From the NCBI RefSeq assembly GCF_046119375.1, contig NW_027362769.1:374790001-374854000 (forward strand): a stretch of DNA of 64,000 nt, written 5' to 3'. Both the position numbers and the translations under genes were made by a program. Origin of the DNA: Phyllobates terribilis (Eukaryota). The notes under the pieces are model-generated. The model did not search any database. It was not told where the DNA came from and saw only the letters and a list, made by a program, of their open reading frames with translations. Below are positions 9,201 through 40,390 of the stretch, one piece after another (the stretch's first letter is position 1; the number at the start of each line of letters is the position of its first letter).

Positions 9201-12200
9201 CCCATAATAATAAGTACAGAGTCCCATAAGAACAACCACAGTGCCCCATAATAATTACAGTGCCCCATAATAACATCCACAGTGCCCCATAATAATAAGT
9301 ACAATGGCCCATAATAACAGCCACAGTGCCCCATAATAAGTACAATGCCCCATAATAACAGCCACAGTGCCCCATAATAATAAGTACAATGCCCCATAAT
9401 AACAGCCACAGTACCCCATAATAAGTACAGAGTCCCATAATAACAACCACAGTGCCCCATAATAAGTACAATGCCCCATAATAACAGCCACAGTGCCCCA
9501 TAATAACAACCACAGTGCCCCATGATAACAGCTATGGAGCTCCTCTAATGACCGCTTAAGTGTCCCTATAATATCAACCCTCAAATAACGGCCATAGATC
9601 CCCACATAGTCCCAATAACAACAGCACCAGTACTCTAAAAATTACATCCAGAGACCACATAATAGCAACCACAGTACCCTAAAAATAACAGCCTCAGTGC
9701 CCTATGATAACAGTCCCTGTCCTAAAGCCACGGTACCCTAAGGGTATGTGCACACGTTGCATTTTTTATGCGTTTTTGTTACAGGAAAAAAAAACATCGT
9801 TTTCCAGTACCAGCAAAGTGAACGAGATTTCAGAATTTCTTACTGATGCTGCTTATTTTTTCCTTGCAAATTTGAATTAAATCTGCCGCATTTCAATTCT
9901 TTCAGAGTTTTTGCAGCATTTTTCATCTATTCAAATGAATGGGTGAAAAAACGTATCAAAGATGAGCGTATTTTATGCAGCGCTTTTCCTGTCAACACTT
10001 CCATATTTGCAGCAGTAATATCTAATGCACATACTGAACATGTGAACATACCCTAATAATACTAAGCAGGGTCCCCATAATAAGAGCTGATGACAGCCAC
10101 ATTGCCTTCACATGAGAACAGCGCCCTAGTAAAAAAACCACAACGCTACACTGCCCTCAATAACAGCCACAGTGATCTTATCTCAGAAGAGGACTATTGT
10201 AGCCCCCAGTAATTACTGAGTAAGTAAGTATAACCCTCATCATCTGCTTTGATCATCTAGAAATCACTTACGAGGAAGTTTCCACTGGAGGCCGGCGTGG
10301 TGAACAAATTAGAGAGAATTCTTCCCATTCTCAGGGGTAAGTGAGGCATTTACTCCACGCAGAAGACATCAGAGATGCAAGTGATCTGTGAAATTACATA
10401 GGACTGCAATAACGCTAACCTCACACGTAGCCATTTATTTTGTTTTTGGTCATTTTTGTTTGTTTTTCATTTGTGCCTTATTCTGCATTTAATTAGCTTT
10501 TTTTTAAGTTTATTTTATATGTACTATTCTGTTTTTTGTTCCTTTTTTATGTTCGTCATTGTGAAGAAAGTTTGGAGTTTTCAGATTTTTGCGGCCGTTT
10601 CATCATTGCAACGTTTTAAAAAGTCACTAAATTTTTATGAAAATGTCATCCAGCTTTCCTCGTTTATCTACATCTTAAATTTTTGGTGAAACATATGACA
10701 TTTTGGGTTATTAAAATCCCCAAACCGGTTAAAGACAAAAATAAAGCGCTTTCTTTCTTTATTTTTGTGCAAAATTCTTGAATCATGGACCATTTGGAAG
10801 AATTTGGTGCAAAAAAAAAAGCCCTTAACGAATAACACAAGAGAAAGTAAACAGAAAAGTGACTCTTCTTTTTTCCATTAGGTCTATGACATCACGTAAT
10901 TAAAAACTGACTAGCTAAATCTTTCTAAGTTCTATGTAAAAACAGAAGGTCATTTTTTCCTGTATGAGTCATAAGTCACTGCAAAAGTCCCAGGTCAGGG
11001 AGAGGAGGGAGCAGCTGGGTCAGGAGTTGAACAGATGATGATTGCAGAGACGAGAGACCTCCTGTTTCTACATAGAGCAGAGAAAAGAGAAGAATTAGCT
11101 GGGTAGAAAGGCAAAATGAGCAATTGTAAGTACACAGTGCTATATAATATGATGATTGCAATGTATTAAGAGGATAAAATCTTTGATGGGAGTGCTTCTT
11201 TAAAGAACTACAAGTCCTAGCATAATGGATAAATGGACAAATTGCATGGCCGGCGTCTGTCTCTAACAGCAGAAAGCGGAGCTGAGCTCTGTGCGCTGCT
11301 GTTAACCATTTATGTGATGCTGTCAATCTCTGACAGCAGCATTTAACTGGCGGAGTTGCCAGTACAATCGCATTGTCCCCCCTACATGGGACTCAATTGC
11401 AGAATATTAATGAGTTGAAGGCTACCGGGAACTAGATGTTCGCAAGTTCAAGGGTAGTAAAAAAAAAAACGAAAAAAAACCCCATAGTTTTAAAAATATA
11501 TATTAAAAAAAGTAAAAAATTTGAATCATTCCTCATTTTCCCTCATTAAAAAATGAATATATTTGAAATCACTGAGTCCGTAAACGTCCTGTACATCAAT
11601 ATATAAAATTAATGAATCCGTACGGAAAACTTCAAAAAGAGAAAAAAATGATCAAAACGCCAGAATTGCCCTAAACATCCTATGTACGACAAAATGGAAT
11701 CAAGGAAAACGTCAGTTCGCAATGCAAAAAACAAGCCCTCACACAGCTCAATAGACAGAAAAATAAAAACATTCCGGGGGTCTCAGAAAATGGCGACATG
11801 AACCAAAATTTATTTATCTGTATTTTTTTTTTTTTTAAACTTCAAATTTTTTTTTATTAAATAAAAAAAACAAACTATGCAAGTTTGGTATCACCGTAAT
11901 CGTACAGACCTGGAGAATCAGAGGAAAAATAAAAAATCCTTGTCGGGAAGGGGTTAAAGAACTCCTTTGCCTCTGAATAGATACCAAATGAATGAGTAAA
12001 GAACTTCATTTTCCTTTCAGGTTGAACAAGTTAGTGGAACAATGGGAGTCCTTCTTGTGATTTTACACGAAACTTGTATGACAATGAACGTTTTCTTCTA
12101 ACTATTATGAAAATCTTAGACTTTCATTTTACAAGGATCAGGAAATGTCACTGTTAAATATTTTATAGTATTTGTTTTATATGCAGAATTTACTTATAAG

Positions 12201-15200
12201 ATCCAATCTGCTGATAAAATCTTTGAACCAGACCTTACGATGCGGTTTATTGCTCACATTAGGAATATATAAACAGGGTCTGTCTGTTCATTCCGCAACT
12301 GATAAGCTAAAGTTGTGACATTTTATTGGAAGTGCTTTTATATAGAGTCACACCCTTCTATAGAAAAAAAAATAAGTTCTAGAACTTTTTAGAACAATCA
12401 AAACTAAAGCACTAAGTAAGTCATTACAGTAGAGGTTCCAAAATATTGGCCGGCTAGCACTTCGAGAACTGGCATAATAGCAGAACGTCGTAATATGGGA
12501 TCTAGAATCAACCAGGTTATGAAAATATTCTGTGTACTGTAATATTTGGTGGATCAGGGCGACACTACACTCTATAACTTAGAGTTACATAGTTACATAG
12601 TTACATAGTTTATAAGGCCGAAAAAAGACAAGCGTCCATCCAGTTCAGCCTATTTCTTGTGCACTGCTGCTATTCCGCAGCGTTGATCCAGGTTAAGGCA
12701 AAAAAAAACCATGCGGTATAGGCCAATTTACATCATTGAGGAAAAATTCATTTCCCGACACCAATCTGGCAGTCAGATTAAATCCCTGGATTAATTAACT
12801 AAGCATAAGATGTAATTTTATTGTTCTCAAGAAAGGCGTCCAGGCCTCTCTTGAACTCATTAAGTGAGTTGGACATCACCACTTCCTCTCCCAGAGAGTT
12901 TCAGAGTCTCACGGCTCTGACCGTAAAGAATCCCCTTCTATGCTGGTGCAGGAACCTCCTTTCCTCCAGACGCATAGTGTGCCCCCTCATCTTTGTCACC
13001 ATCCTTGGTATAAATAGGTCATGGGAGAGATCTCTGTACTGCCCCCTGATGTATTTATACATGTTTATGAGGTCTCCCCTAAGCCTTCTCTTTTCCAACG
13101 TAAATAGGCCTAATTTTGACAACCTCTCTGGGTATTCTAGTCCCTCCATTCCCTTTATTACCTTAGTCGCCCTCCTTTGTACCCTCTCTAGCTCCAATAT
13201 GTCTTTCCTGAGCACAGGAGCCCAGAACTGTGCACAATATTCTAAGTGCGGCCTTACCAGCGCTTTATACAGAGGAAGAACAATGTTCTCATCATATGCC
13301 CCTATTCCTCTTCTGATGCATGCCATGACTCTATTTGCCTTCGCAGCTGCTGCCTGACACTGGGCACTCCAATTTAATTTGCTATTAACCAAGACGCCCA
13401 GGTCCTTCTCCATGTCAGATTTCCCCAACGGTTTCCCATTTAATATGTATGGGTGACTGCTGTTTTTCTTTCCCATGTGCATGACCTTACATTTATCGGC
13501 ATTGAACCCCATTTGCCACTTTTTGGCCCAACTCCCCAATTTATCTAAATCCTCCTGTAGCTGTGACCTATCCACATCTGTATTAACTACTTTACAAAGT
13601 TTAGTATCATCTGCAAATATTGCTATTTTACTATGCAACCCTTCCACTAGATCATTAATAAATATATTAAATAATATAGGGCCCAAGACAGACCCTTGAG
13701 GCACCCCGCTAGTAACCCTGACACACCCTGAGCTTACTCCATTGATAACCACCCTCTGCTTTCTATCACTCAGCCAGCTATTTACCCACTTGCACACATT
13801 ATCCCCCAGACCAAGCATTCTCATTTTATATACCAACCTTTTGTGTGGCACGGTATCAAACGCTTTGGAGAAGTCAAGGTATACACCATCCACTGACTCT
13901 CCCCGGTCCAGCTGTGAGCTCACCTCCTCGTAGAAGGCCATCAGGTTTGTTTGGCAGGAGCGATCCCTCATGAATCCATGTTGATATGGAGTTAGACAGT
14001 TATTATCATTAAGATATTCTACAATAGCATCTCTAAGAAATCCTTCAAACAATTTACCCACAACAGACGTTAAGCTGACTGGTCTATAGTTCCCAGGGTC
14101 ACTTTTAGACCCCTTTTTGAATATTGGTACCACATTTGCTTGGCGCCAGTCTAGTGGGACAGTCCCTGTCCATAAAGAGTGCTTGAATATAAGATACAGC
14201 GGCCTGTCTATCACATTACTTAATTCTTTTAGTACCCGGGGGTGTATGCCATCTGGGCCTGGTGACTTGTCTATTTTGATATTATTTAGGCGTTTCTGTA
14301 CTTCCTCCTGGGTTAGGTGGGTGATATTTAGCGGAGGGTTTACTTTATCACTCTGCATTTCCTCCGATAAATTGTTTTCTTTTGTGAAAACAGTGGAGAA
14401 GAAGCTATTGAGTAGGTTTGCTTTACCCTCATCGCCCTCTATGATTTTACCCAGGTTATTTTTCAATGGGCCAACTCCATCAGTTTTAATCCTTTTACTG
14501 TTTATATAGTTAAAGAACAGTTTGGGATTCGTTTTACTTTCCTTGGCAATTAGTCTCTCTGTCTCCTCTTTTGCTATTCTTATTTGTTTCTTACAGATTT
14601 TGTTTTTTTCCCTATAAGATATTAGCGCTTCCTCGCTGCCTTCTTGTTTAAGTTTACCGAAAGCCCTTTTTTTGTTTTTCATTGCCCTCTTGACTTCCTT
14701 ATTTAGCCACATTGGCTTCCTCCTATTCCTAGCCCTTTTATTCCCGTAAGGTATGTACCTTCTACAGTGACTATGTAGGACTGTTTTGAAAATTTCCCAT
14801 TTTCTATCCGTGCTCCTATTACTAAAGATACTATCCCAGTCTATAAGGTGAAGGGCATCTCTTAGCTGTTCAAACTTTGCCCTCCTGAAGTTCAGTGTTT
14901 TGTGACTCCCTTGCTGGGCACCCTACTGAAGCACATGTGGAATTGTATAATGTTGTGGTCACTATTTCCCAGATGCCCCCCGACCTGCACCTCAGTTATT
15001 CTGTCTGGCCTGTTAGTTAATATTAAATCTAAAAGGGCCGTCCCTCTAGTTGGTTCCTGCACAAGTTGTGACAAATAATTGTCTTTGATAATTGACAGAA
15101 ACCTGTTTCCTTTCTGAGATCTACAGCTTTCGGTTTCCCAGTCTATATCGGGGTAGTTGAAGTCCCCATATCGGGGTAGTTGAAGTCCCCAACAATGTGC

Positions 15201-18200
15201 AACAATGAAACACTAATACTTCGAATTGGTCAGTACTGGCATTCAAGTACATAGGGTTGGTCACAATTATAGTTGGAATCGGTCAACAATTGACCATACA
15301 ATTGGCATACTATTATATGGAACTGGTAAGCTCTGGCGTACTATATATTTGAGGCTGGTCAGAATTAGCACTATAATACTTGGGATGGTCAACATTGACA
15401 TTTTAACACTTGACATTGGTTAACATTAGCACACTAATACTTGGAATTGGTCAACATTTGCATGCTAATACTTCAGGTTGGTCAACATTGGACCAATACT
15501 TGGGGATGGTCAACAATGGCACTTCAATACTTGAGGTTGGTCAACATTGGACCAATACTTGGGGATGGTCAACAATGGCACTTCAATACTTGAGGTTGGT
15601 CAACATTGGACCAATACTTGGGGATGGTCAACATTGAAACTTCAATACTTGAGATTTATCAACATTGACAACCTAATACTTGGGATTGGTCAGCAATTGC
15701 ATGCTAATACTTGAGGTTGGTCAACATTGGAACAAAACTTGGGGATGATCAACATTGGCAATTCAGTACTTGATATTGGTCAATATTTACACACTGATAC
15801 TTGAAATTAGTTAACACTGACACCGCAACCTTTGTGATTGGTCAAGCATAACACTTCATTACTTGGGAATGGTAAACAATTGATTTCCAATACTTGAGAT
15901 TGGTCAACATTGGCACTCCAATACTTGGGGATAGCCCACATTGGTAGTCCAATAATTTAGTATGGTAAACATTGGCACACTAACACTTGAAATTAGTCAT
16001 CATTGGCTTACTAATACATGGAAATGGTCAACATTGTTACTCCAGTACATTAATACTTGAAACTGGTCAACATTTACACACTAAATCTTGGAACTGGCCA
16101 ACAATGACATTCCTATTCTTGTGTTGGTCAATATTGGAACACCAATTCTTGAGGTTGGTCAGTATCAGCACACTAATACTTGGTGTTGGTCAACACTAGC
16201 ATATTACCGTAATACTTGAAACTGGTCAACATTGGCACTGTATTACTTGAGATTGGTTGACATTAGCACACTATTACTTGAAAATAGTCAACAGTAGCAC
16301 ACTTGCTTTTAAGGCCTTAGTTAGATAATGTCTTCGGCCTCTACAAGTCCTATCTCTTTAAAAGTATTATGAAAGTATTGAGTTGTATCTATGACAGAGT
16401 GAATCATGAATTGCAACCTTGGTGTGACTTACAACTATTATGATTCAAGTTACCACCTTACTCATGCCAGTCATTGTGTTGCGTAATAATTATTTTTTTG
16501 CTTTTATAGATGCCCCATTGCTGTTCCGCAGTAAATTTTCTAATCGATACTTAGAGAGGCTCCGACTTTTAGAAATTTATTCCAAGGAACTTCTTCAAAC
16601 TGACTCCAAGATCTCTCAGTGTGAAGAGGTTATTGATTTTTTTACTCCTAAGAAGCAGGACCTCACTCCGTCCTTTCCTGAAAACAGGTTTGTATAGTAG
16701 ACGTCCTATCTAGAGATCATGAATGGACAGACGTATCACCGTCACCACGAGTCATGTTAACATCCTTGAATGTTCATCTTTGGTTTTTCTGAGCATGAAA
16801 AGTACCTAAATCGTCATTATCTCCTTATTTCAGTGTTGTAATAATGCCATCAGACAATGATCAAAAAGAGGTAACATATCCACCCAGGTCAACACAACTC
16901 ACCACCACACAGCCAATTATATCTGAATCCTACATCTGCCTTGATAACTTTGAAACCAAAGATACCAAGAACAGACCATTTAAGGTCAAGAAGAATCAAT
17001 GCATTGATGTCCTGATAAGAGATCCTTCTGGTAGGTCCTAGATTTCACATGTGACAAGAAAAGAGTCACCACCAAGTGAATCTAAAAGTTAGGCATCTAT
17101 TCCTTTCTTCTAGGCTGGTGGTTGGTGGAGAATGAAGAGAAACAAGTATCCTGGTTCCCGGCTCCTTATCTGAAAAAGTCAGAGTCTTTAGAAGATATTA
17201 ACTCAAAGAGGAAATCATTCAGGAAAGGTTGGTGAAGTGGACAACTTTCATAGCTCCAACTGAGGCAATTATTCAGAAAAATCATAGAGGCATAAGAGGA
17301 TTACACAGGTGGGGGCTTGTGACCATTGTTTCCTCTAAAGGCCTCTATAAACATTAGACTACTGTCGTCTAAACCCGTTGATATCTCATTGACAGATGAT
17401 GTAGTTGGAGAGAATGATCTGGGCTGACGGCAGCGACTCTCTCATAGATAACACAGGAGGACTCAGCCGAGCCGAACGTTTCTGTGTATGGGGGAATTGG
17501 GAGAGATAGCAGTCCGCTGAACGATTAGTCCGACATCATTTGCCCAAAAGTTATTTATTATGCATGGGGGGGTTTGTGTATTTGTGGCTTAGGTTAAGGC
17601 ACTCGGACTACCGATCACATTGTTCTTCTGGAGATAAGCTGCCGGCCCATGTGTCTGCTGGCGGCTTTCTCATAGAGGACACGGGTACGCTCAACCAAGC
17701 GCTCCTGTGTATGGGAGTGTGAACAGATATGGCTGTCAGAGGAATGATCGGCCAAAGCATCGTTCAGCCGACAGCCATCTAATGTGTATGGCTGGCCTCT
17801 GGGACAGGAGCTCTGATATCTCCAAGCCAGGTTATACAAAAATTCTAGAAATATTAGCCTAAATTGCTCTTACAATTTTTCTTACAGCAGCCAGATACTC
17901 CAGAGCATCTTGATCTAAGAGAGTGACAGTTATTGATGGCGATTCATCAAAGCTTTTTCACCAGATTTTTGGCGAAAAAAAGCTTTGAAAAGTCGCATTA
18001 TTTTGTGCAATTGCGAGTTTGCACAAAAAAAGTGATTTGGCGTGTTAAGGTCATTCATGCCGTCAAATTCATGATGAGCGGCGGTGTTTGCTAGGCCACA
18101 GATCTTACTCCAGCTACGCACCCCACCTGATTCATTAAGAGGCGTGCGCTTCTTAATGAATCAGGAGCATCTGCTCCAAAACGCCCCCTCATCAAGACCG

Positions 18201-20383
18201 ACTAGAGAATCGCTGGATTGAATGAATCGCCCCCATGGTCTATATCTCAAGTGGTTTAAATCAATAAGGGGAATTTCATCTGCATCCCTGCTGGTCTAGG
18301 GCAGTGAATATGTTAATTTCTGCATTCAATGTGATCTAAAGCGGTAAAAAGGTTATTTTCTCACTCCTGGTGGTCTAGGGTAGTAAAAAGGTTTGCCTCA
18401 GCAGTGAAGAGATTTATGTCAGCATCCCTGGTGGTCTAGGGCAGTGTACTCTTTGGGTTAGTTTCAGCATCCATGGTGGTCTAGGACAGTGTATTCTTAC
18501 GGTCAGTTTCAGCATCGCTGGTGGTCTAGGATAGTGTACTCTTAGGGTTAGTTTCAGCATCCCTGGTGGTCTAGGACAGTGTACTCTTAGGGTTAGTTTC
18601 AGCATCCCTGGTGGTCTAGGATAGTGTACTCTTTGGGTTAGATTCAGCATGCATGGTGGCCTAAGAAAGTGAATCCTGCTTTGAGCAGGGGGTTGGACCA
18701 GATGACCCAGGAGGTCCCTTCCAACTCTACCATTCTATGATTCTATGATTCTAAGAATGTGGAAGTACTAGTCTAAGTATCCCTGGTAGAATAGGTCAGT
18801 AAAGAGCTTAGTGCCTGGATCTCCTGTGGTCTAGGGCAGTATTCTGTATGAATTAAAGTCAACATCCCTGGTGGTCTAGGGCAGTTGGTCTAGGAATATG
18901 TAGAGGCTAGGGTTAGTATTCCTGGTGGTCTAGTATGCATAGGGGCCTGGTGGTCCAGGGTAGTGAAGAGGTTCATCTCAGTATCCTAGTGGGGGTTAAT
19001 GACTGTCTCTGGTCACCTAGGACAGGGAAAGGTTTGTTTTCAAGCTCTTGGGTTTCTTGAGTGAAGAAATTATTCTGTTCTATCTATATTTTTCTAACAA
19101 GTTTCATCCATCCTGCAGCCATGTTGATACATATCCTTTTTTTCAGTAATGCTGCTGATCAGATTTCATTTTTTTCAGGAACGTATTACTACGCAGAGAA
19201 GGGCTACAAAGCTCAGAAAACAGATGAAATGTCACTTACGGTTGGCGTTGTGGTAGAGGTCATTGAGAAATCTGAAATTGGATGGTGGCTTATTTGGTAA
19301 GAGGGTTATTATTTTTTCTCTTTACAGCCAATGATTATTTAAAAGGGTAGAGTATAGATGGTATTAGCCCCCCATTCAAGTAAATACCAGACACAACCTA
19401 TGGACTAGAGTGGAGAAAGTATCCATACTTTTCCAATCTCAAAACTTGGCAAACAAATAGATGCTAAAGCATTTGGCATGGGGCTAAATATGGGACTAGA
19501 ATCCAAGAAATATCCATTCTTCATCTAGAAAAATCCTCATGGTGGCATGGTAGGCATATCAAAGTTGCTGCTTCTTTAAATTTCTGTGGTTAGGGCTGGC
19601 GGAGAATCTGCAATATGGGTAGAAAAGCAGTGGTCAGGGTGGGCGGCAATCAAAAAGCATAGAAAAGAAGAAGCTATGTCGAACTAAGTAAATGGAGAAG
19701 AAGTCAGAATGTCTGGGCAGTCTGAATTTACATGATATACTGTACATTCATAATAGTTTCCTTCTTTCTTGGTTTCTTTCTCTTTTAGTTACAATGGAAG
19801 ATTTGGTTATGCCCCATCCATGTGCCTCAAGCCATATCAAAACCCGCACCAGAAACTACAAGTAAACCTACATAATAACCTATCAGGGTCTTCTCCCAAT
19901 CTCTCCAAGGTGGTGAGCAGTCTAGATACAGCCTCCAACCCACAACATAGGAATAATGAGGATGGGGGCCATAAGGGTAAACTAGAAAGGCTGCAATCAA
20001 TATCACTGAACGATCTCGAAGACTTATCAGACGCATCTGACCAGTCATTTGTCAAGTCAAGGAGAAAAAGAAATGTATATGTGGAATGGGAGGTGCAAGA
20101 CGACAAGGAAGGTGCATCTTCTTCCATGACTGAGAAGCCAAGATCCATCCAGACAGTGGTCTCCATTCATGAATGGAAGGATAATAAGGAGATGGGCGAC
20201 CATGTGGAGGAAAAACAACGAAAAGATTCAGGATTTGTGGAACATCTGTCACCAAAGACATCAATTTCTTCGGACGATGCTGACACCACAACCCCACCTG
20301 TGCCAGAAAGACCTACAATGCAGGAGATCCAGTCTAGATGTACCAACACAACCAAGAAAGCTGCTCTACAGGGGAGTGGATGA
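6250..20383 (+). CDS. NOXO1: NADPH oxidase organizer 1, tandem copy A (PX, SH3, SH3, long linker, proline-rich C-terminus), 472 aa
   Basis: Hand-built exons 6250-6309 ([20 protein letters not shown]), 7018-7098 ([20 protein letters not shown]), 10261-10336 ([17 protein letters not shown]), 16510-16687, 16834-17030 ([13 protein letters not shown]), 17114-17227 ([20 protein letters not shown]), 19179-19296, 19789-20383 ([18 protein letters not shown]). All introns GT-AG, phases compatible, total 1419 nt = 473 codons. [17 protein letters not shown] motifs and adjacency to TBL3 favour NOXO1 over NCF1. Confidence 0.92.
6604..6972. mobile_element. Degenerate Harbinger-type MITE in NOXO1-A intron 1
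   Basis: Ends GCCTCATTCAGAC ... ATCTGAATGGAGC with TAA/TTA flanks. Confidence 0.45.
7200..9720. repeat. About 2.5 kb A/C-rich minisatellite (~40-45 bp modules: ccccataataataagtacag(a/t)g / ccccataataacagccacagtg) in NOXO1-A intron 2
   Basis: Obvious tandem periodicity with degenerate edges; generates overlapping repetitive ORFs in all three minus-strand frames. Confidence 0.95.
9742..10053. mobile_element. PIF/Harbinger-type MITE
   Basis: TIRs GGGTATGTGCACA / TGTGAACATACCC; TAA target-site duplication on both sides. Confidence 0.8.
11250..11953. mobile_element. piggyBac-like non-autonomous element, partial
   Basis: Ends GAAGGGG|TTAA; shares CTGTCAATCTCTGACAG..CATTTAAC and downstream AT-rich blocks with the complete copy at 49906-51039. 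Confidence 0.65.
12585..15196 (-). mobile_element. CR1 LINE, 5'-truncated ORF2 (end of APE endonuclease plus complete RT) in NOXO1-A intron 3
   Basis: 603-aa ORF 14712-12901 with [28 protein letters not shown]; endonuclease motifs GDFNYPDI and LDLILTN..GNSDHN upstream; TGG>TGA stop near the C-terminus; (CTATGTAA)n tail at ~12585-12610. Confidence 0.95.
15200..16300. repeat. Degenerate ~28-31 bp minisatellite (ggtcaacattggcacttcaatacttgaggtt)
   Basis: Recurrent GGTCAACATT...AATACTTG units; clean 59-bp dimers at ~15480-15660. Confidence 0.85.
17936..18234. mobile_element. MITE with GGCGATTCAT termini and internal palindrome
   Basis: GGCGATTCATCAA at ~17938 versus TGAATGAATCGCC at ~18221-18233; internal hairpin TGATTCATTAAGA-GGCGTGCGCT-TCTTAATGAATCA at ~18130-18165. 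Confidence 0.55.
18285..19030. repeat. 39-bp minisatellite (catccctggtggtctagggcagtgtactcttagggttagtttcag), degenerate at the edges
   Basis: About 7 clean units at 18414-18660 and decayed units on either side. Confidence 0.85.
18671..18750 (+). mobile_element. Extremely 5'-truncated CR1 3' end
   Basis: GGGGTTGGAC..GATGACC..GAGGTCCCTTCCAAC followed by an (ATTCTATG)n tail, the classic CR1 terminus. Confidence 0.8.
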
Positions 20384-31139: not shown

Positions 31140-31211
31140 GAATATTATAAAGAGAGGCTACCACTGTCTATAATCATAACAATCTTGTCGGCAAGATGCC
31201 TCAGCAGACCA
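31140..31211 (+). promoter_or_regulatory. Candidate TATA box and proximal 5' region of NOXO1 copy B
   Basis: TATTATAAA at ~31143-31151, about 45-60 nt upstream of the ATGs at 31196/31211. Motif only; the TSS is not demonstrated. Confidence 0.35.
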
Positions 31212-33774
31212 TGGCCGGGCGTCATCCGTTGGAAGTCAAAGCTGTCGGCGTTCTTCGGAATGGGAAGCGGAAGGTAGCGTATTGCAACCATTTGTTCTTC
31301 TCGTAGCTGTACAGTCTATAGCAACGTCAACAGAAACAGCGCCACCCTTGTCTACAGGTTGAGTCTAGTATTGCAGTTCAGCTCTATTAAAGTGAATGGT
31401 GCTGAGATGTAATACCACACATAACCTGTTGGGGTGCTGTTTTTGAAAGAACACAGCCATGTTTTTAATAATCTTGAGCCTGTTTGCACTCCGTTGCACT
31501 CACCTGCCTCAATAATTATGTCTTGAAAATTCACTAAGGCTACTTTTTAAACGAGTACTCTCTTTTGTCTGCTTACTAGAAGGGTCCTTCAATGATCTCC
31601 TATTGGGACCCCAAGAATTCAGTTTTAATCTATTTTAAATCTTAATTTTCCTTCAGCGCCACCATAGGGGAAATTAGGCATTACACAATATCTATTCAAA
31701 TCTATTGGTTGTCTGTGTAATGTAGCACAGGACAGGTCCTCCAGAGCGAGAGATAGTCTTTACACTGCTCACCGCTTTGACCATGAGATCATGAACAATG
31801 GACTCCCATATATGAAATCAATAGGGCGTATGAAAATGGGTTTCCAAACTAAACAACCCCTTTAAATATGGTGGTTCTGTGAACAGAAACAGAGTATAAA
31901 CCATGATGATAGCCTCCTTGAACCTTGAGGTTGCCATATGCCTACAGGATGCATGGCTCTAACCACAGGACCCCACACATTTTGGATGAAAGTTGGTTGA
32001 ACCTAACGATTTTGGCAGGACCGAGCAATCATCTGTTGTGTATGGGGTCCTTCCTACTCTCCTCCAACAGATGATACCAGGAGAGATAAGAATCATGGAG
32101 TTTTCAGGGGAGAAGTCTGACAGCATCTTTCTTCCCTCTGCCCGTTCAAAAACATCAAATCGATCTTATTAAAGGGGATCGGAGGACTTTTGGGGTCCTG
32201 CCGTTTCTGAGCCTTAATGCAAAATCTATAACAAGACCCCACATGCCATGTTGTGGCCCATGTGCGGTGCACCCCCTAAAGTTACACCCCTAGTAACAAT
32301 GACAAACACGCATAGCCTGCTATGTATAGATCTTGCTTCTTCTTCCAGGCCATGCTTGGACTTCTAGTCCATCAATAATAAAAAAAAATATCTATAAAAA
32401 AAAAGTGAATTTTATGTAATTATTTTTTTCATTTTGACAGAGCAATATCTTTTCAATTCTGTGGTCTGACCACAACGACATAGTCGTCTACCGGACGTTT
32501 GAAGACTTCAAAAAGATGCACGTAAGTAACATTTTTCCCAAAAAGGACGTTGCTCGTTGCGTTGTAGCCCATGGAGCCATGGTTTACATAGAAACCAATG
32601 ACGCTTTTGCTTAATGAGTATCTAATAGCGTTTAGGCGAGGCCTGGTCACGTGAGAGGCCACGTAATTGCACTACAGTTGCCACGTTTTAGTATCCGACA
32701 TGTATCATGTGACCAGTGTCCAATTTTAGCCATGTGTTTAATTTATGACATTTTTTTGATAAAAGGGTTGTTTGCGACACCGGCCATAGCAATCAAAATG
32801 AAAGCTGGACTCTGATTGGTTGCATTAGGCAACAATGGCAAAATTAATTGAGACTTCAAAACTCAGGCAAGGGACAAGTATATCATTTGTCCACAGCAAC
32901 CAGCATTACCCATAGCAACCAATCAGCTGTCAGCTTTTATCTTCCACAGGGCCTTTGAAGAATGAAAGATGTGACCTGATTGGTTGCTGTGGGAAACTGC
33001 TTTACTTTTCCCTGTTAGTAATTCTAATAAAGTCCCCTATGACCTCGTTAGTTTCTGTCTACGTGGAAGATTTTTAGTCTGTATTTCGGTGGCAAAATGT
33101 TTTGGATAGAGCATAAAAACATTTTTTAAGACTCTTATTTACACCCAATTTGACACGTCTAGAGGTGTCCTAAAAAGGGGTATGGCTGAGAGAGGTGATA
33201 AAATCTGCTGAATTTAACAAACTTTTGGATTAAAATCTGCACTATCTTGCGCCAGTCATAAGGAAAATCCCTTAACATGCATCACAAGATGCAGAAAATG
33301 TATTCGCCATTTTTATAAACTTGATTTAGAAAAAAGTGAAATAAATCTTTTTTTTTTCCTCTTCTTTATTCATAGCGAGAATTAAGAAAAAAATTCCCAT
33401 TGGAATCCGGGTTACTTCGAAAATCGGAGAATATGATCCCCAAACTGAGAGGTAACGAGACTAGTCATCAATATCCAAGATCGACTGGTCCCAATCATTT
33501 CTAGGGATCCCATAAAAACAATCAAATTTAGGGGGTTCATTATAATTCAGCGGTCGGCCCCCAAGCATAGAAGGGCCCAGTATTTATGTAGCCCTTTCCT
33601 GGACCCTTGGTGAAATCCAACACAGGCCCCACCTGGCTAAGCGCCCTTTAAAGGGTGCCTAGCCCATTATATATATATATATATATAAATCCTGGCTAGA
33701 ATTTTTCCACATTTAGGGTATGATTTAAAGAGAAAAAAAAAAGAAAATTCTATATAACCCACACACACACAGCG

Positions 33775-33839
<65 letters not shown>

Positions 33840-36800
33840 TAGATGGTGGCCCGATTCTAACGCATCGGGTATTCTAGAATATGTATGCGGCCGACTGGGC
33901 GCGACTAATCAGCGAAGCAGTGTTTAAATGGGTTGTGTACTACTTTAAATTAACCCCCCAATGTATCCCCCCGGGGCCCCTAATGAATTTTGTAATTACG
34001 TCAGGTTGTCAATACTGCTTGTGACAACATCGCTGACCACGCACAGCCAGCACGTAATTCCCCCGGCTCTTGCTTCCGCTTACATCACGACTATTTGTGG
34101 CTGCAGCCAGGGGTCTCCTGTTCCGCGTACCACGGTGAATGACGGGCTGTGGGCGGGGTTATCCCCCATCGTGTCACACCCAGCATCCACCGCGCGCTAT
34201 GTCAATGAATGCGCGTGCAATCAGCGAACCGTGTTAGTGAGGACCGGGGAGCGGCGCTGCCTGTGCGGGTACTTCCGCTGCGAGCAGCCGGGAGATGACC
34301 GGCTAGCGCCGGTCATCTCCCGGCTGCATCGCCGCTGACCTCCATGCGGCTACCGTCGGGAGATCAGCGGCTAGGTTCGCTGATCTCCCGACGGCAAGTG
34401 TGAAGGGAGGACCGGGGAGCGGTGCCGCCTAGGCCGCCGGTCGGGGTACTTCTGCTGCAAGCTGGTCATCTCCCGGCTGCATCGCCGCTGACCTCCGTGC
34501 GGCAGATGAGCCGCTAACGGCCGCCATCTTGTTCTGAAATCCGGCGTCGCTGATTGGCCGCGGCTGGACCAATCAGCGACGCTGGATTTCCTGGATGGAG
34601 ACAGACGGGATAAGCCGATTATATAGTAGATATATATATATATACACACACATATATACATACATAAACATACATACATTCACACAAACATAAAATGGAA
34701 AAGAAAAATCATACCCAAGATGTGGAAAAATCCTATCCAGAATTTATGGCTCGGTCACGTAAGTAAATTCTGGATAGGATTTTTCCCCATGTTGGGTATG
34801 ATTTTATAGAATTTAAAAAAAAAATCGTACCCAAAATGTGAAAGAATCCTATCCGGAAATTTTTTATTTTTTTTTCTTTCCGAAGAATGGGACTGTCCCA
34901 TGGGCGGATAATTATCTGTAATAAATATTCGGCATAGCAATGTGTTTACACCAGAGGTGGCTGAGTAATTCCCTAAAACGGCAATTACCATTGTGGACAT
35001 TATCTTTAACAGCCGTCCCGATGATTCATGGGCTAATTTCCTCTTCTTCCTTATAGACGTGCCGATCTTCAGGAAAAACAGGAGCAGCAGTCGCTTTATA
35101 GAGAGGCTGCGATTACTGGAGAGATTTTCCCAGGAGCTGCTGAAGACGGACAACAAAATCTCACAATGCAACGTGGTGACGACGTTCTTTACGCCCAAAG
35201 ACAGTGACCTAAACGCCACCTTCCCCGAAAACAGGTGTGTGCAGCCTGAGGACAACATATTCACATTTTAGGACATTTTAGGACGCATTCAGGACATTTT
35301 AAGCAGTCTTCGGAGCCACTTTTTTTTTTTTTTTTTTAGGTGGAGTTTGCACAATCCCCAACCTTTGTTATACAATGCACCAGATCGTCCTTGGAGTACC
35401 AGAACTGCTGGCAAATATGTTATTATACTTCATTTAGTGATCTAAAAGTTAGGAGACATGTTGCCCACTTTTTAAAATGACCAACAAAGAAATTCATAGT
35501 CGGGGGTCTCCTATTGAGGACCCTCATCTAGTAACTGGAATGCAGCAGCTACTGAGAGCATCTTTAACTATGGAGGACCTGATCTGTCCATGCATTGTGA
35601 TGACAGACTATTAAACACTGTGCAATACTTAATTTCTCCTGTAGTGGCCACTGTACAGAATTTTAACACTTGCTTCTTGATTCAGATTATGTGATCACAG
35701 TTGATCACTGTGATTTTTAACATATTGTGTGGGTTTTCTTAAAATAAAATTTAAGATTCAACAGCTTTAGAGGAGACCTATCACCAAGTCAAAAGTGGCC
35801 AGTTTTGCTTTTATTTCATTATCAAGGTTTTTTTGATTGTTAATTCCATACCATTCCAGAGATACAGCCCTTTTTTAATGCTTTTTTGGTCACACGGCAT
35901 TAATGCAGAGCAACCTAAAGCCACATCCCCAGAAAAATCCTATCAGCCACGCCCCTTTGGCAAAGAACATAAAAATTAGGACTAAATAAAATGGTCCATA
36001 GCTCTGGAACCGTATTGTACATTTTAAAAAGACAAAAAATGGAATATTCAGGGAGGCTAAAGGAATAAAATAAGACCAAACAACTGGCCATTTTTTGGCT
36101 TTGTGACAGATCCCCTTTAAGAGACAGAAGCTTCTGCACTAAGACTTGGAAATAAAATATAACTCGTTTTTCTGGTTACAGTGTAGTGATATTGCCATCA
36201 GAAGTAAGAGAAACTCAGAAAAGAGAAGAACCGAAACAACTACCACAACCACCAGCCTCCGCACCTATTGTATCCCAGATGTATGTGTGTATCGAAGACT
36301 ACGAAACCAAGGACACCAAGAACCGGCCCTTCAAAATCAAGCGCTGTGAGCAGCTGGGGGTATTGATCAAGGAAAACTCAGGTGAGACGTCACCAGGCCT
36401 TTATCGATAGATGCAAGTTATAGGAATGACATCATGGAAGTTGTAATAACGCCTATTTTACATTTTAGGGTGGTGGCTGGTGGAAAACGAAGAAAAACGA
36501 GTGGCCTGGTTTCCTGCTCCATTCCTTAAGGCGGTAGAAGAGAAAGAGGAGTCGGATTCGGGAACAGAATCAGATGACAAAGGTACGCTGTGCACCCGGT
36601 GTTGCATGTTCTACAGATGTATGCTTAAAAACAATGGGAACATTGGAAACTTCATTGCTATAGAAAAAGAAAAGAAAAAAAAAACCGGTGCAGGAATTGT
36701 TTCCACTACTAGGTGGCAGATTAGAATATTGTATCACTCTTGTGTGTTGCTCAATCGGCTCAAGAGCACAATATCTGGTCAGACAAAGTATTGCAAGCAA

Positions 36801-39800
36801 AAAATAATCCATTTTTTTTTTATAAAATATCATTATTTTTGGGAGAGGTGAGGAGACCGATACACTGCAATTGTGGCTGATCTCTGCTTTTAGAGGCAGA
36901 TGCAGGCGTAAGGAGTGTGGAGTAAGCTCAGCTCCTGATCTATGCCAGACATATAGTTCATGGAGAACGACAGGGTTAATAATTCCATAAACTATAACGT
37001 CCTGTACTCTTTTACTATCCAGGAGTCCGTTACTATTCAACTTCATCTTATGAAGCCATGAGCTGCGATGAATTGTCCATCTCCAGAGGAGTCGTAGTAG
37101 AAGTCAAGGAGAAGTCAAACAATGGATGGTGGCTAATAAGGTATGCAAATAGGATCGGTTTCTAGAAATAAATCCATTCAATGAGGATTCTACACTGCTC
37201 AAAAAAATAAAGGGAACAGTCAAGTAACACATCCTAGATCTGAATGAATGAAATTCTCATTGAATACTTTGTTCTGTACAAAGTTGAATGTGCTGACAAC
37301 AAAATCACACAAAAATCATCAATGGAAATCACATTTATTAACCATTGGAGGCCTGGATATGGAGTCACCCCCAAAATTAAAGTGGAAAAACACACTACAG
37401 TCTGATCCAACTTTGATGTAATGTCCTTAAAACAAGTCAAAATGAGGCTCAGTATTGTGTGTGGCCTCCACGTGCCTGTATGACCTCCCTACAACGCCTG
37501 GGCATGCTCCTGATGAGGCTGAGTATTGTGTGTGGCCTCCACGTGCCTGTATGACCTCCCTACAACGCCTGGGCATGCTCCTGGTGAGGCTGAGTATTGT
37601 GTGTGGCCTCCACGTGCCTGTATGACCTCCTTACGCCTGGGCATGCTCCTGGTGAGGCTGAGTATTGTGTGTGGCCTCCACGTGCCTGTATGACCTCCCT
37701 ACAACACCTGGGCATGCTCCTGATGAGGCTCAGTATTGTGTGTGGCCTCCACGTGCCTGTATGACCTCCTTACAACGCCTGGGCATGCTCCTGGTGAGGC
37801 TGAGTATTGTGTGTGGCCTCCACGTGCCTGTATGACCTCCTTACGCCTGGGCATGCTCCTGGTGAGGCTGAGTATTGTGTGTGGCCTCCACGTGCCTGTA
37901 TGACCTCCCTACAACACCTGGGCATGCTCCTGATGAGGCTCAGTATTGTGTGTGGCCTCCACGTGCCTGTATGACCTCCCTACAATGCCTGGGCATGCTC
38001 CTGATGAGGCTCAGTATTGTGTGTGGCCTCCACGTGCCTGTATGACCTCCCTACAACGCCTGGGCATGCTCCTGATGAGGCTCAGTATTGTGTGTGGCCT
38101 CCACGTGCCTGTATGACCTCCCTACACCGCCTGGGCATGCTCCTGATGAGGTTGCGGATGGTCTCCTGTGGGATCTCCTCCCAGACCTGGACTAAAGCAT
38201 CCGCCAACTCCTGGACAGTCTGTGGTGCAACGTGACGTTGGTGGATGGAGCGAGACATGATGTCCCAGATGTGCTCATTCGGATTCAGGTCTGGGGAACG
38301 GGCGGGCCAGTCCATAGCTTCAATGCCTTCATCTTGCAGGAACTGCTGACACACTCCAGCCACATGAGGTCTGGCATTGTCCAGCATTAGGAGCCCAGGG
38401 CCAACCGCACCAGCATATGGTCTCACAAGGGGTCTGAGGATCTCATCTCGGTACCTAATGGCAGTCAGGCTATCTCTGGTGAGCACATGGAGGGCTGTGC
38501 GGCCCTCCAAAGAAATGCCACCCCCACACCATTACTGACCCACTGCCAAACCGGTCATGCTGAAGGATGTTGCAGGCAGCAGATTGCTCTCCACGGCGTC
38601 TCCAGACTCTGTCACGTCTGTCACATGTGCTCAGTGTGAACCTGCTTTCATCTGTGAAGAGCACAGGGCGCCAGTGGCAACTTTGCCAATCCTGGTGTTC
38701 TCTGGTAAATGCCAAGCGTCCTGCACGGTGTTGGGCTGTGAGCACAACCCCCATCTGTGGACGTCGGACCCTCATGGAGTCGGTTTCTAACCGTTTGTGC
38801 AGACGCATGCACATTTGTGGCCTGCTGGAGGTCATTTTGCAGGGCTCTGGCAGTGCTCCTCCTGTTCCTCCTTGCACAAAGGCGGAGGTAGTGGTCCAGC
38901 TGCTGGGTTGTTTCCCTCATATGGCCCTCTCCACGTCTCCTGGTATCTGCTCCATGCTCTGGACACTGGGCTGACAGACACAGCTACCCTTCTTGCCACA
39001 GCTCGCATTGATGTGCCATCCTGGTTGAGCTGCACTACCTGAGCAACTTCTGTGGGTTGTACTGTAGACACCGCCTCATGCTACTGTACCTCTAGGGGTG
39101 AGAGCAATGGCAAAATGAAAAAGTGACCAAAACAACAGCCAAAAAGGATGAGAACAGAGAAATGGTGTGTGGTCACCACCTGCAGAACCGCTCCTTTATA
39201 GGGGGCATCTTGCTAATTGCCGATCATTTCTACCAGTTGTCTGTTCCATTTGCACAACAGCAGGAGAAATTGATTCACAATCAGTGTTGCTTCATAACTG
39301 GACAGGTAGATTTCACAGAAGTGTTATAGACTTGGAGTTATATTCTGTTGTTTAAGTGTCCCCTTTTTTTATGAGCAGTGTATATCTTAATATAGATTTA
39401 GTTGAAAAATGTAGAAACATTTATAGTTTTAAAAATGCCATGTAATACCTCCCTTCCCCTGTGGGGGAGCTGCAGGGAAAATAAAACTTGCTGTATCAGT
39501 ATAACTTTACCATATACTTGACATAATGGATCTCTAATCTCATCTTTATGAATAGGTATAATGGAAAAACTGGATATGTCCCAGCGATGTATTTGAAACC
39601 CTACCGAAATTGTCACCAGCTTGAGTCCATGATGAACCAAGGAGCCTTTTCTTCTATGGGAAACCTCTTCAAGGCCTCCAGCACCTTGGAGGTGAACAGA
39701 GCAGAGGAGTCATGGAGGAAATATGATAATCATCCTGACGCAGAAAATAAACTGGACAGACGAAAATCCAGGTCAATTAGCGGTTTCCCACTAAATACTC

Positions 39801-40174
39801 AATATGGATTTCAACAACCTCCTGTGAGAACATCACCGATGGGAAAAATCGGGGTGGAGACCCCAAGCTCGGAAACAGAAATGAAGCCTAAGGTTCGGAA
39901 GAACAGAAATCCACCTGCTGCTTCCGAGCAGCCAGCAATAGTCGTCCAAGAAGCCCCCATCCCCCGACCGAGGAAGATAAGTCAAGACGCACGGACTATG
40001 GGAAGTAATCCCAGCAGCCCTAAAGAAACTAGCGGCTCCCCCAACTCTCATCTTGTCTTTGACATTACCCCTCCGGTCCCTCAACGGCCCAAACATCATG
40101 AAATTCTTAACAATTGTACATTTGTAACGAGGACAGCTTTAAAGAAAAGGGAGGGCGTACTCCTGGACGGCTAA
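31211..40174 (+). CDS. NOXO1: NADPH oxidase organizer 1, tandem copy B, 482 aa (487 aa if the in-frame upstream ATG at 31196 is used)
   Basis: Exons 31211-31273 ([13 protein letters not shown]), 32441-32521, 33376-33451, 35057-35234, 36182-36381, 36469-36582, 37023-37140, 39556-40174. All GT-AG, total 1449 nt = 483 codons. Exons 2, 3, 4, 6, 7 are the same size as in copy A (81/76/178/114/118). [20 protein letters not shown]. Directly abuts TBL3 tail-to-tail. Confidence 0.94.
33780..33838. repeat. (TA)n microsatellite
   Basis: About 29 TA units, resuming after the Helitron at 34631. Confidence 0.95.
33839..34630 (-). mobile_element. Non-autonomous Helitron, family 1 copy 2 (short, 792 bp, array not expanded) in NOXO1-B intron 3
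   Basis: Reverse complements of the same termini as 21675-24257 (CTAGATGGTGGCCCGATTCTAACGCATCGGG ... ATTATATAGTAGA); inserted in a (TA)n tract. Confidence 0.85.
35771..36116. mobile_element. Kolobok/T2-type MITE in NOXO1-B intron 4
   Basis: Ends AGGAGACCTATCAC / GTGACAGATCCCCT|TTAA. Confidence 0.55.
37193..39380 (-). mobile_element. Full-span Tc1 transposon with frameshifted transposase in NOXO1-B intron 7
   Basis: TA TSDs; TIRs CACTGCTCAAAAAAATAAAGGGAACA; remnants [18 protein letters not shown] (HTH), [30 protein letters not shown]. Confidence 0.92.
37444..38150. repeat. 10 x 71/68-bp tandem array made from the Tc1 transposase 3' end
   Basis: Unit starts at 37444, 37515, 37586, 37654, 37725, 37796, 37864, 37935, 38006, 38077. 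Confidence 0.95.
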
Positions 40175-40335
40175 AGACAGTAAAATGTGTTTTTTTTAAA
40201 CTTTTAATTATATCTATATTTATTCTGTATATTTATTATTTCAGTAATTGGATCCATATTGGTGAAGTGGCACTGAGCAGATCGATATAGGGTTTAGTAT
40301 ACCTGGTAATTTACTTATATTATGTTCATTCTATG

Positions 40336-40390
40336 CTTAGGAGTCCAGTGGGCGGTCCCACTCAGTAGAACCGCCCACTGGACTCCTAAG
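40336..40390. other. Perfect 21-bp inverted repeat (MITE-derived hairpin) in the probable NOXO1-B 3' UTR
   Basis: CTTAGGAGTCCAGTGGGCGGT-13 nt-ACCGCCCACTGGACTCCTAAG; AATAAA at ~40411. Confidence 0.8.

What the first reader, a model, noticed from the sequence alone, without database searches (positions are those of the whole stretch)
39700..40174. NOXO1 copy B tail contains a p47phox autoinhibitory-region-like motif
Seen: between SH3-B and the PRR, copy B has about 150 aa including RRKSRSIS (39758-39781), [11 protein letters not shown] (RKISQDAR at 39971-39994) and proline-directed sites PSSP/SGSP just before the PRR. From recall, p47phox has RKRLSQDAY in its polybasic autoinhibitory region and QSPGSP MAPK sites before its PRR, and mammalian NOXO1 is defined by lacking this region and acting constitutively. 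Inference: copy B may retain or have re-evolved phosphorylation-gated autoinhibition, making it an intermediate between p47phox and mammalian NOXO1. The match is a 7-residue motif and could be convergent.
Basis: partly seen in the sequence, partly recalled or inferred. Interest (0 to 1): 0.75.

Follow-up and report, generated by a model that had tools for sequence, protein, structure and literature searches.

The report
Frog NOXO1 tail phospho-motifs, not AIR
The last exon of a poison-frog NOXO1 gene encodes a disordered tail with conserved probable phosphorylation motifs that most non-mammalian NOXO1 proteins share, and its exact resemblance to the p47phox autoinhibitory region comes from a single lineage-specific residue.

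Summary
RRKSRSIS (39758-39781) and RKISQDAR (39971-39994) lie in the terminal exon (39556-40174, +) of an intact 8-exon NOXO1 paralog. That paralog is identical to the NCBI protein 'NADPH oxidase organizer 1-like [Phyllobates terribilis]'. Spliced contigs in four runs from two studies confirm exons 4-8.

- **Motif 1 is not special to copy B.** It matches a [LN]xRx[KR]S[RKH]S[LI] element found in sharks, bichir, sturgeon, lungfish, caecilians, salamanders, all three frog paralog clades and birds. Both serines are invariant in 56 sequences.
- **Motif 2 is conserved only in hyloid frogs**, as PRKIS[V/I/L][D/E]A. The Q that makes it read like p47phox 'SQDA' occurs only in Phyllobates among 152 family proteins.
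- **SGSP is not conserved** (SGPP in the nearest relative).
- **The defining AIR core is absent.** No proline-rich tandem-SH3-binding core (xPPR[PR]) occurs in the linker.
- **Similarity to the AIR is at chance level.** Linker-versus-AIR alignment scores no better than shuffles (P=0.56 and 0.92). A tail profile hits only the p47phox C-tail.
- **AlphaFold2 was uninformative.** A control motif also failed to dock.

A NOXO1 that retains an AIR was already published for medaka in 2007. The most likely reading is conserved basophilic phosphorylation motifs. Their function is untested.

The parts
31211..40174 (+). NOXO1 copy B (clade B paralog), 8 coding exons: 31211-31273, 32441-32521, 33376-33451, 35057-35234, 36182-36381, 36469-36582, 37023-37140, 39556-40174. 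The product is 482 aa. The NCBI model starts 5 codons upstream at 31196.
   Evidence: Splice sites read. Junctions of exons 4-8 are confirmed by spliced contigs. 100% identity to P0033. PX plus two SH3 domains by Pfam.
39556..40174 (+). Terminal exon of copy B: last strand of SH3-B, about 150-aa disordered linker, PRR, C-tail and stop codon.
   Evidence: AF2 pLDDT is about 43-55 across the linker and 70-81 over the PRR/C-tail.
39662..39682 (+). NLFKASS, the frog form of the family-wide S-T-P-N-L island about 25 aa after SH3-B.
   Evidence: Conserved island in alignments.
39749..39784 (+). Motif 1, [12 protein letters not shown]. It is a NOXO1 motif found across jawed vertebrates, with two invariant serines (P0033 S353 and S355).
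   Evidence: Near-invariant in 26 anuran B orthologs. S66 and S68 are invariant columns in 56 sequences from sharks to birds.
39956..39991 (+). Motif 2, [12 protein letters not shown]. It is a hyloid-clade motif, P-x-P-R-K-I-[ST]-[VILQ]-[DE]-A, and fits a basophilic kinase consensus (R-K-x-S-hydrophobic).
   Evidence: Q at +1 is unique to Phyllobates. It sits at the same distance from SH3-B as the R[KN]DSGF[DVE]E motif of other NOXO1 proteins.
40010..40042 (+). PSSP (40010-40021) and SGSP (40031-40042), proline-directed Ser sites.
   Evidence: The first S-P is partly conserved in hyloids. SGSP is SGPP in Anomaloglossus and absent elsewhere.
40070..40147 (+). PRR PPVPQRP (40070-40090) and the C-tail [19 protein letters not shown]. 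This is the only part of the tail with demonstrable homology to p47phox.
   Evidence: A tail profile hits p47phox residues 359-390 (1K4U chain P), E=3.6e-5. Invariant P/P/P/E/I/C/T columns. AF2 helices with pLDDT 70-81.
6250..20383 (+). NOXO1 copy A (clade A paralog), 8 exons, 472 aa. Its tail has KLERLQSIS (motif 1) and [11 protein letters not shown] (the family form of motif 2).
   Evidence: Gene model and 41% identity to copy B. Groups with Ranitomeya and Anomaloglossus clade A.

Best explanation
The region is the intrinsically disordered C-terminal linker of an expressed NOXO1 paralog (anuran clade B) of Phyllobates terribilis. It carries short linear motifs typical of non-mammalian NOXO1.

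Motif 1 ([12 protein letters not shown]) is an ancient NOXO1 element with two invariant serines set among basic residues. Motif 2 ([10 protein letters not shown]) is the hyloid-frog version of a positionally equivalent R-K-x-S site.

The most likely function is inferred, not shown. Both would be substrates of basophilic kinases (PKA/PKC/AKT/PKD type). Their phosphorylation would tune organizer activity by recruiting a phospho-reader such as 14-3-3, or by modulating the weak PRR-to-tandem-SH3 lock that is documented for human NOXO1.

It is not a p47phox-type AIR, because it has no proline-rich core that could occupy the tandem-SH3 groove. The exact 'ISQDA' identity with p47phox comes from one lineage-specific substitution to Q and is best read as convergence.
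For: Shown:
- The gene is intact, spliced and transcribed.
- The family assignment is secure: PX plus two SH3 domains by Pfam; p47phox tandem-SH3 structures are the top fold matches; a WD40 gene lies downstream, as in the published NOXO1-TBL3 synteny.
- Motif 1 is conserved in 26 of 26 anuran B orthologs.
- Both motif 1 serines are invariant across 56 sequences spanning sharks, bichir, sturgeon, bowfin, teleosts, lungfish, caecilians, salamanders, frog clades A, B and C, and birds.
- Motif 2 is conserved as PRKIS/T plus an aliphatic residue plus D/E in hyloids only. The p47 S328-like pattern is found in 1 of 152 family proteins.
- The linker is predicted to be disordered.
- No match to the published tandem-SH3 motif occurs in the linker.
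- There is no AIR similarity beyond chance.

From established knowledge: R-[RK]-x-S-hydrophobic and R-x-x-S are basophilic kinase consensus sequences. Human NOXO1 is weakly autoinhibited through its PRR (PMC2864300; PMC12730246).
Against: There is no phosphorylation, binding or activity data for any non-mammalian NOXO1 tail. Motif 1 could still be a degenerate descendant of the AIR core: it shares R-R-x-S, and the medaka element IPRRDSPSS that Kawahara et al. aligned to the AIR fits the motif 1 pattern. The collinear order of RR-S, RK-x-S, S-P and PRR with p47phox is suggestive. Frog motif 1 lacks the +2 proline of a canonical 14-3-3 mode-1 site. AF2 could not test docking.
Confidence: 0.6

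Rival explanations
1. The tail holds a true but degenerate AIR. Motif 1 would descend from the p47phox AIR core (PPRRSS) and motif 2 from the S328 site (RKRLSQDAY). Together they would bind the tandem SH3 domains and be released by phosphorylation, so non-mammalian NOXO1 would be stimulus-gated like p47phox.
For: The elements are collinear with p47phox (sequences). Motif 1 is the first conserved basic/Ser element after SH3-B. The medaka NOXO1 element that Kawahara et al. called an AIR (IPRRDSPSS) fits the motif 1 pattern R-R-x-S-x-S. Invertebrate p47phox-like proteins already have an AIR, so the NOXO1 ancestor had one. Motif 2 lies at a fixed distance from the PRR across NOXO1 clades.
Against: The two positions that PMC12730246 reports as contributing most to binding, Pro at motif position 2 and Arg at position 4, cannot both be placed on KLDRRKS or PIPRPRK. 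Alignment scores do not exceed shuffles. A 56-sequence tail profile finds no AIR-containing PDB chain (1NG2, 1UEC) at E<=10. The spacing between the motifs is about 70 aa, against 24 aa in p47phox. The 'SQDA' identity is derived within one lineage.
Confidence: 0.15
2. The resemblance is pure chance in a neutrally drifting, low-complexity linker, and neither motif has a function.
For: The linker is disordered and rich in S, P, K and R. Shuffled linkers align to the AIR as well as the real one. SGSP, and the Q of SQDA, are not conserved.
Against: Motif 1 has two invariant serines over the whole span of jawed-vertebrate divergence sampled here, while its flanks are unalignable. Motif 2 is conserved across nine hyloid genera amid variable flanks. 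Neutral drift does not produce such islands.
Confidence: 0.07
3. Motif 2 is a newly evolved proline-rich SH3 ligand (P-x-P-x-P-R-K) that competes with p22phox for the tandem SH3 domains in hyloid frogs. This would be a re-invented AIR, regulated by phosphorylation of the adjacent serine.
For: The P-I/T-P-R/Q-P-R-K prolines are as conserved as the RKIS core in hyloids. A serine directly follows a basic, proline-rich stretch, as in RGAPPRRSS.
Against: The spacing is PxPxP rather than PxxP, and the stretch does not fit the strong or the weak published tandem-SH3 motif. There is no AF2 confidence peak (pLDDT about 50), although the control shows this test is insensitive.
Confidence: 0.1

Closest known systems
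p47phox (NCF1) autoinhibitory / polybasic region, residues about 292-340
   Same: It lies between SH3-B and the PRR. It is basic and serine-rich. The order is an RR-S site, then an RK-x-S site, then S-P sites, then the PRR and C-tail. The PRR/C-tail is demonstrably homologous.
   Different: The frog linker has no PPII core (RGAPPRRSS / [PAVIL]PPR[PR]). Its two motifs are about 70 aa apart rather than 24 aa. It lacks the YRRNS and RFLQQRRR polybasic continuation. Similarity is not statistically detectable. It is encoded in one terminal exon, as in NOXO1.
Medaka (Oryzias latipes) NOXO1 with a predicted AIR (Kawahara, Ritsick, Cheng & Lambeth 2007, PMC2121648)
   Same: It is a non-mammalian NOXO1 with an RR-x-S element between SH3-B and the PRR, interpreted as an evolutionary remnant of the p47phox AIR. 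Its sequence IPRRDSPSS fits the motif 1 pattern.
   Different: That paper stated that the AIR is absent from zebrafish and all tetrapod NOXO1. Its Xenopus model was truncated before the last exon, so frog tails were never examined. The frog motif has no proline before RR.
Human NOXO1 PRR-mediated weak autoinhibition (Dutta & Rittinger 2010, PMC2864300; motif PTVPTRPSP, Kd about 50 uM)
   Same: The domain plan is the same and the PRR/C-tail is conserved. This is the only tail segment with raised AF2 confidence in the frog protein.
   Different: The human tail is about 35 aa between SH3-B and the PRR and lacks motifs 1 and 2. The frog PRR has Q at motif position 3 (VPQRP), which lies outside the published weak-motif definition.
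NOXA1 regulation by PKA phosphorylation and 14-3-3 binding (recalled from memory: Kim et al., J Biol Chem 2007; not checked here)
   Same: It is a precedent for basophilic-kinase and 14-3-3 control within the NOX1 system. Bird NOXO1 motif 1 (RSRSLP) is a textbook mode-1 14-3-3 site.
   Different: It concerns a different subunit. Frog motif 1 lacks the +2 proline. Nothing has been tested for NOXO1.

Membership tests
NOXO1 (NADPH oxidase organizer 1) | N-terminal PX domain followed by tandem SH3 domains | tested here: met
   Pfam PX (residues 34-125) and SH3 hits on P0033, which is copy B. The AF2 model's top fold matches are p47phox tandem-SH3 structures.
NOXO1 (NADPH oxidase organizer 1) | C-terminal PRR plus conserved C-tail (PxVPxRPxxxEILxRCTTxTK) | tested here: met
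   [26 protein letters not shown] at 40070-40147. Invariant columns. Profile hit to the p47phox C-tail, E=3.6e-5.
NOXO1 (NADPH oxidase organizer 1) | Groups with NOXO1 rather than p47phox, with the expected gene structure and neighbourhood | tested here: met
   It falls in a clade of anuran NOXO1 proteins with 100/100 support. Database names are NOXO1 or NOXO1-like. The 8-exon structure has a single terminal exon. A WD40 gene lies downstream, consistent with TBL3 synteny. No p47phox sequence was included in the tree.
p47phox-type autoinhibitory region (AIR) | Tandem-SH3-binding PPII core, RGAPPRRSS; published motif [PAVIL]PPR[PR][^DE][^DE], or the weak form with T/A/V at position 3 | tested here: not met
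   A regex scan of the copy B tail finds no match, and the PRR itself has Q at position 3. Motif definition from PMC12730246.
p47phox-type autoinhibitory region (AIR) | Sequence similarity to the AIR beyond chance | tested here: not met
   phmmer of the exon against PDB finds no p47phox hit at E<=10. A 56-sequence tail profile finds no AIR-containing chain. Local alignment against shuffles gives P=0.56 (human) and 0.92 (Xenopus).
p47phox-type autoinhibitory region (AIR) | Conserved phosphorylatable serines in basic context (S303/S304 and S328 equivalents) | tested here: inconclusive
   Conserved basic Ser motifs exist, but equivalence to S303/S304/S328 cannot be established. The S328-like 'SQDA' is specific to Phyllobates.
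p47phox-type autoinhibitory region (AIR) | [quoted passage not shown] | not testable with these tools
   AF2 gives pLDDT about 50 at both motifs. A control NOXO1 (cod noxo1b) with a perfect strong motif, VPPRRPR, also gives pLDDT about 49, so the negative result carries no weight.
14-3-3 mode-1 binding site (R-S-x-pS-x-P) | Arg at -3, Ser at -2 and Pro at +2 around the phospho-serine | tested here: inconclusive
   Frog motif 1 is K-S-R-S-[IL]-S, with no +2 Pro. Bird NOXO1 is R-S-R-S-L-P, a full match. The consensus is recalled from general knowledge.

The most novel reading that the evidence does not exclude
The motif [LN]xRx[KR]-S-[RKH]-S-[LI], with two serines invariant from sharks to birds and lost in the four placental mammals examined, could be a phospho-switch. 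It might be a degenerate descendant of the AIR or a 14-3-3 site. If so, the NOX1 organizer would be stimulus-gated in most vertebrates, and 'constitutively active NOXO1' would be a mammalian peculiarity rather than the defining property of the family.
Probability: 0.3. Interest if true: 0.6.

Novelty: new member of a known kind. Interest (0 to 1): 0.3.

Why it matters
NOXO1 is usually described as the unregulated counterpart of p47phox. That view rests on mammalian proteins and on a 2007 survey whose frog model lacked the last exon.

The frog gene here is ordinary and already annotated. The ortholog comparison it prompted shows that long tails with a deeply conserved di-serine motif are the norm outside mammals.

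If those serines are regulatory, NOX1 control in fish, amphibians and birds differs from the mammalian textbook. That is cheap to test by Ser mutants in a NOX1 reconstitution assay.

The specific claim of a p47-like AIR in copy B is not supported by the comparisons made here, although binding was not tested.

Tried and rejected
- **Word search with the 205-aa exon.** No hit, because full-length relatives exceed the length window. Solved by the exhaustive search and then a search with a full-length hit.
- **Pfam on the exon.** Nothing. Pfam p47_phox_C hits on other NOXO1 proteins looked promising, but the model is only 33 positions and covers the PRR/C-tail, not the AIR.
- **PDB sequence and profile searches.** Only the p47phox C-tail was found.
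- **AF2 of copy B residues 150-487 with an 88-row alignment.** The linker is disordered, with no peak at either motif, and pTM is 0.37. Foldseek shows the two SH3 domains are not placed in the superSH3 arrangement (rmsd 13-21 Å to p47phox structures).
- **Control AF2 on cod noxo1b, which has a strong VPPRRPR motif.** It also shows no peak, so AF2 evidence was discarded as insensitive.
- **Third word search restricted to the tail.** It found no further dendrobatid B orthologs, so the Q state cannot be dated more finely than Phyllobates versus Anomaloglossus.
- **p47phox profile-profile comparison.** Not done, because no p47phox protein id could be obtained from the tools. Only two short AIR segments copied were used.
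- **Rfam scan of the window.** No hits.
- **Reading copy B as a p47phox gene.** Considered and rejected, on exon structure, tree position and N-terminal sequence.
Full report
**What is at the coordinates.**
The + strand of 39556-40174 is an open frame preceded by a TAG acceptor. It begins with the last strand of an SH3 domain ([16 protein letters not shown]) and ends with [26 protein letters not shown] and a TAA stop. PSSP is at 40010-40021, SGSP at 40031-40042 and the PRR at 40070-40090. The window contains no N.

**Gene models.**
Two tandem 8-exon genes lie on the + strand.
- Copy A: 6250-20383, 472 aa.
- Copy B: 31211-40174, 482 aa.
- Both are intact and 41% identical to each other.

I laid contigs of four runs from two studies of 'organism A' on 34900-40400 (5501 letters, within the operators' limit). 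Each run has a single 1.5-1.8 kb contig that joins exons 4, 5, 6, 7 and 8 at GT..AG borders. These are exactly the borders I had predicted. The contigs run about 110-220 nt past the stop codon. So copy B is transcribed and spliced, and the tail is translated in the stated frame.

The 482-aa product is 100% identical to P0033, 'NADPH oxidase organizer 1-like [Phyllobates terribilis]'. The gene is therefore already annotated and the window comes from the golden poison frog.

Pfam finds PX and SH3 domains. A WD40 exon lies downstream on the minus strand, consistent with the NOXO1-TBL3 synteny described in PMC2121648.

**Relatives.**
An exhaustive HMMER search with the exon found 20 proteins. A follow-up search with the best full-length hit found 178.

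A maximum-likelihood tree gives three anuran clades, A, B and C. Each has 100/100 support and each contains Bombina, so the triplication predates crown frogs. Their order relative to birds and to caecilians plus salamanders is unresolved. Phyllobates has a clade C gene (P0111) on the same contig but outside this window.

**Motif 1.**
- In 26 anuran B orthologs, KLDR[RK]KS[RK]S[IL]S is almost invariant.
- Across 56 tails, the two serines are invariant columns while the flanks do not align. The tails come from sawshark, basking shark, bichir, sturgeon, paddlefish, bowfin, teleosts, lungfish, caecilians, salamanders, frog clades A, B and C, and birds.
- Copy A in this window has KLERLQSIS at the aligned position.
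- The four placental NOXO1 sequences in PMC2121648 lack the motif.

So motif 1 is an ancient family feature, not a peculiarity of copy B.

**Motif 2.**
- P-x-P-R-K-I-[ST] followed by V, I or L and then D or E is conserved in Anomaloglossus, Leptodactylus, Engystomops, Bufo, Rhinoderma, Hyla, Dendropsophus and Eleutherodactylus. It is weakly present in Mixophyes.
- It is absent from ranoid and archaeobatrachian B orthologs.
- The Q at +1 occurs only in Phyllobates. A pattern built from seven p47phox orthologs ([RK][RKQ][IL]SQ[DE][AST]) matches 1 of 152 family proteins, and that one is copy B.
- The motif sits at the same distance from SH3-B (133-140 aa) as the R[KN]DSGF[DVE]E motif of clade A, birds, caecilians and bowfin. 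It may therefore be a diverged form of that site.
- SGSP is SGPP in the nearest relative and absent elsewhere.

**Is it an AIR?**
The AIR is defined by a core, RGAPPRRSS, that fills the composite groove of the tandem SH3 domains. The published motif is [PAVIL]PPR[PR][^DE][^DE], or a weak form with T/A/V at position 3. Pro at position 2 and Arg at position 4 contribute most to binding (PMC12730246).
- No such motif occurs in the copy B linker.
- phmmer of the exon against PDB sequences finds no p47phox chain at E<=10.
- A 56-sequence tail profile finds only the p47phox C-tail (1K4U chain P, E=3.6e-5). It does not find the AIR-containing chains 1NG2 or 1UEC.
- Smith-Waterman scores of the 158-aa linker against the human and Xenopus AIR (copied) are 27 and 22. 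Shuffled linkers average 28 and 27, giving P=0.56 and 0.92.
- The post-hoc 7-residue pattern is rare in shuffles (3.5e-5), but it was chosen after seeing the match.

**Structure prediction.**
AF2 on residues 150-487 with 88 homologs gives confident SH3 domains, a helix after SH3-B and a disordered linker. pLDDT is about 49-50 at both motifs and 70-81 over the PRR/C-tail. The two SH3 domains are not placed in the superSH3 arrangement.

As a control I modelled cod noxo1b, whose linker has a perfect strong motif, VPPRRPR. It shows no confidence peak either. I therefore treat AF2 as uninformative here.

**Literature.**
- Kawahara et al. 2007 already reported that medaka NOXO1 retains a predicted AIR, as a remnant of the p47phox ancestor. 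They stated it is absent from zebrafish and tetrapods.
- Their Xenopus model ends at ...GWWLIR, before the last exon, so frog tails had never been assessed.
- The medaka element IPRRDSPSS fits the motif 1 pattern. This keeps alive the possibility that motif 1 is a degenerate AIR core.
- Human NOXO1 has only a weak PRR-mediated lock, and 'equivalent phosphorylation sites are absent' (PMC2864300).

**Verdict.**
The motifs are real and conserved and fit basophilic kinase consensus sequences, so they are probable phosphorylation sites. The specific reading is not supported: copy B does not retain or re-create a p47phox AIR that would set it apart as an intermediate. The AIR core is missing, similarity is at chance level, motif 1 is family-wide and the p47-like Q is a single-lineage change.

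The more interesting by-product is the deep conservation of motif 1, whose function is unknown.

Noticed in passing
window 22099-24002: GC-rich 67-bp satellite, 28 copies at 86% match, in the spacer between NOXO1 copy A and copy B.
   Followed up: no
window 37442-39071 (intron 7 of copy B): A 71-bp tandem repeat (10 copies, 37442-38151) is followed by a Tc1/mariner-type DDE_3 transposase remnant on the minus strand (38085-38510). Contig depth here is in the thousands in all four runs, so these repeats are abundant in the libraries.
   Followed up: partly
window 44787-45116 (-) and about 48500-49000 (-): WD40-repeat exons of a minus-strand gene downstream of NOXO1 (Pfam WD40 E=6e-22). It is probably TBL3 by the synteny described in PMC2121648, but it was not identified directly.
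   Followed up: partly
window 59321-61812 (+): LINE-type element with endonuclease and reverse-transcriptase ORFs (Pfam Exo_endo_phos_2 and RVT_1). It coincides with the strong negative GC skew at 58-62 kb.
   Followed up: no
P0111 (Phyllobates terribilis, same contig, outside the window): A third NOXO1 paralog (clade C, 443 aa) with a shorter tail, motif 1 as SDRGRSQSLG and a PRR (IPTRP) that fits the published weak tandem-SH3 motif. Frogs carry three ancient NOXO1 clades.
   Followed up: partly
P0019 (Gadus morhua noxo1b), residues 413-419: The linker contains VPPRRPR, a perfect match to the strong tandem-SH3-binding motif. It lies about 40 aa after the motif 1 position. This is a better AIR-like candidate in a NOXO1 than the frog motif.
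   Followed up: partly
window 31196-31210: An in-frame upstream ATG adds MPQQT to copy B. The NCBI model uses it, whereas the family-typical start MAGRHP... is at 31211.
   Followed up: no
window 40340-40395: A near-perfect inverted repeat (about 20-nt arms) lies just downstream of the copy B coding region. Contigs of different runs diverge around 40328-40385, and 'organism B' runs share only about 5% of words. This suggests a mobile or repeated element in the 3' UTR.
   Followed up: no
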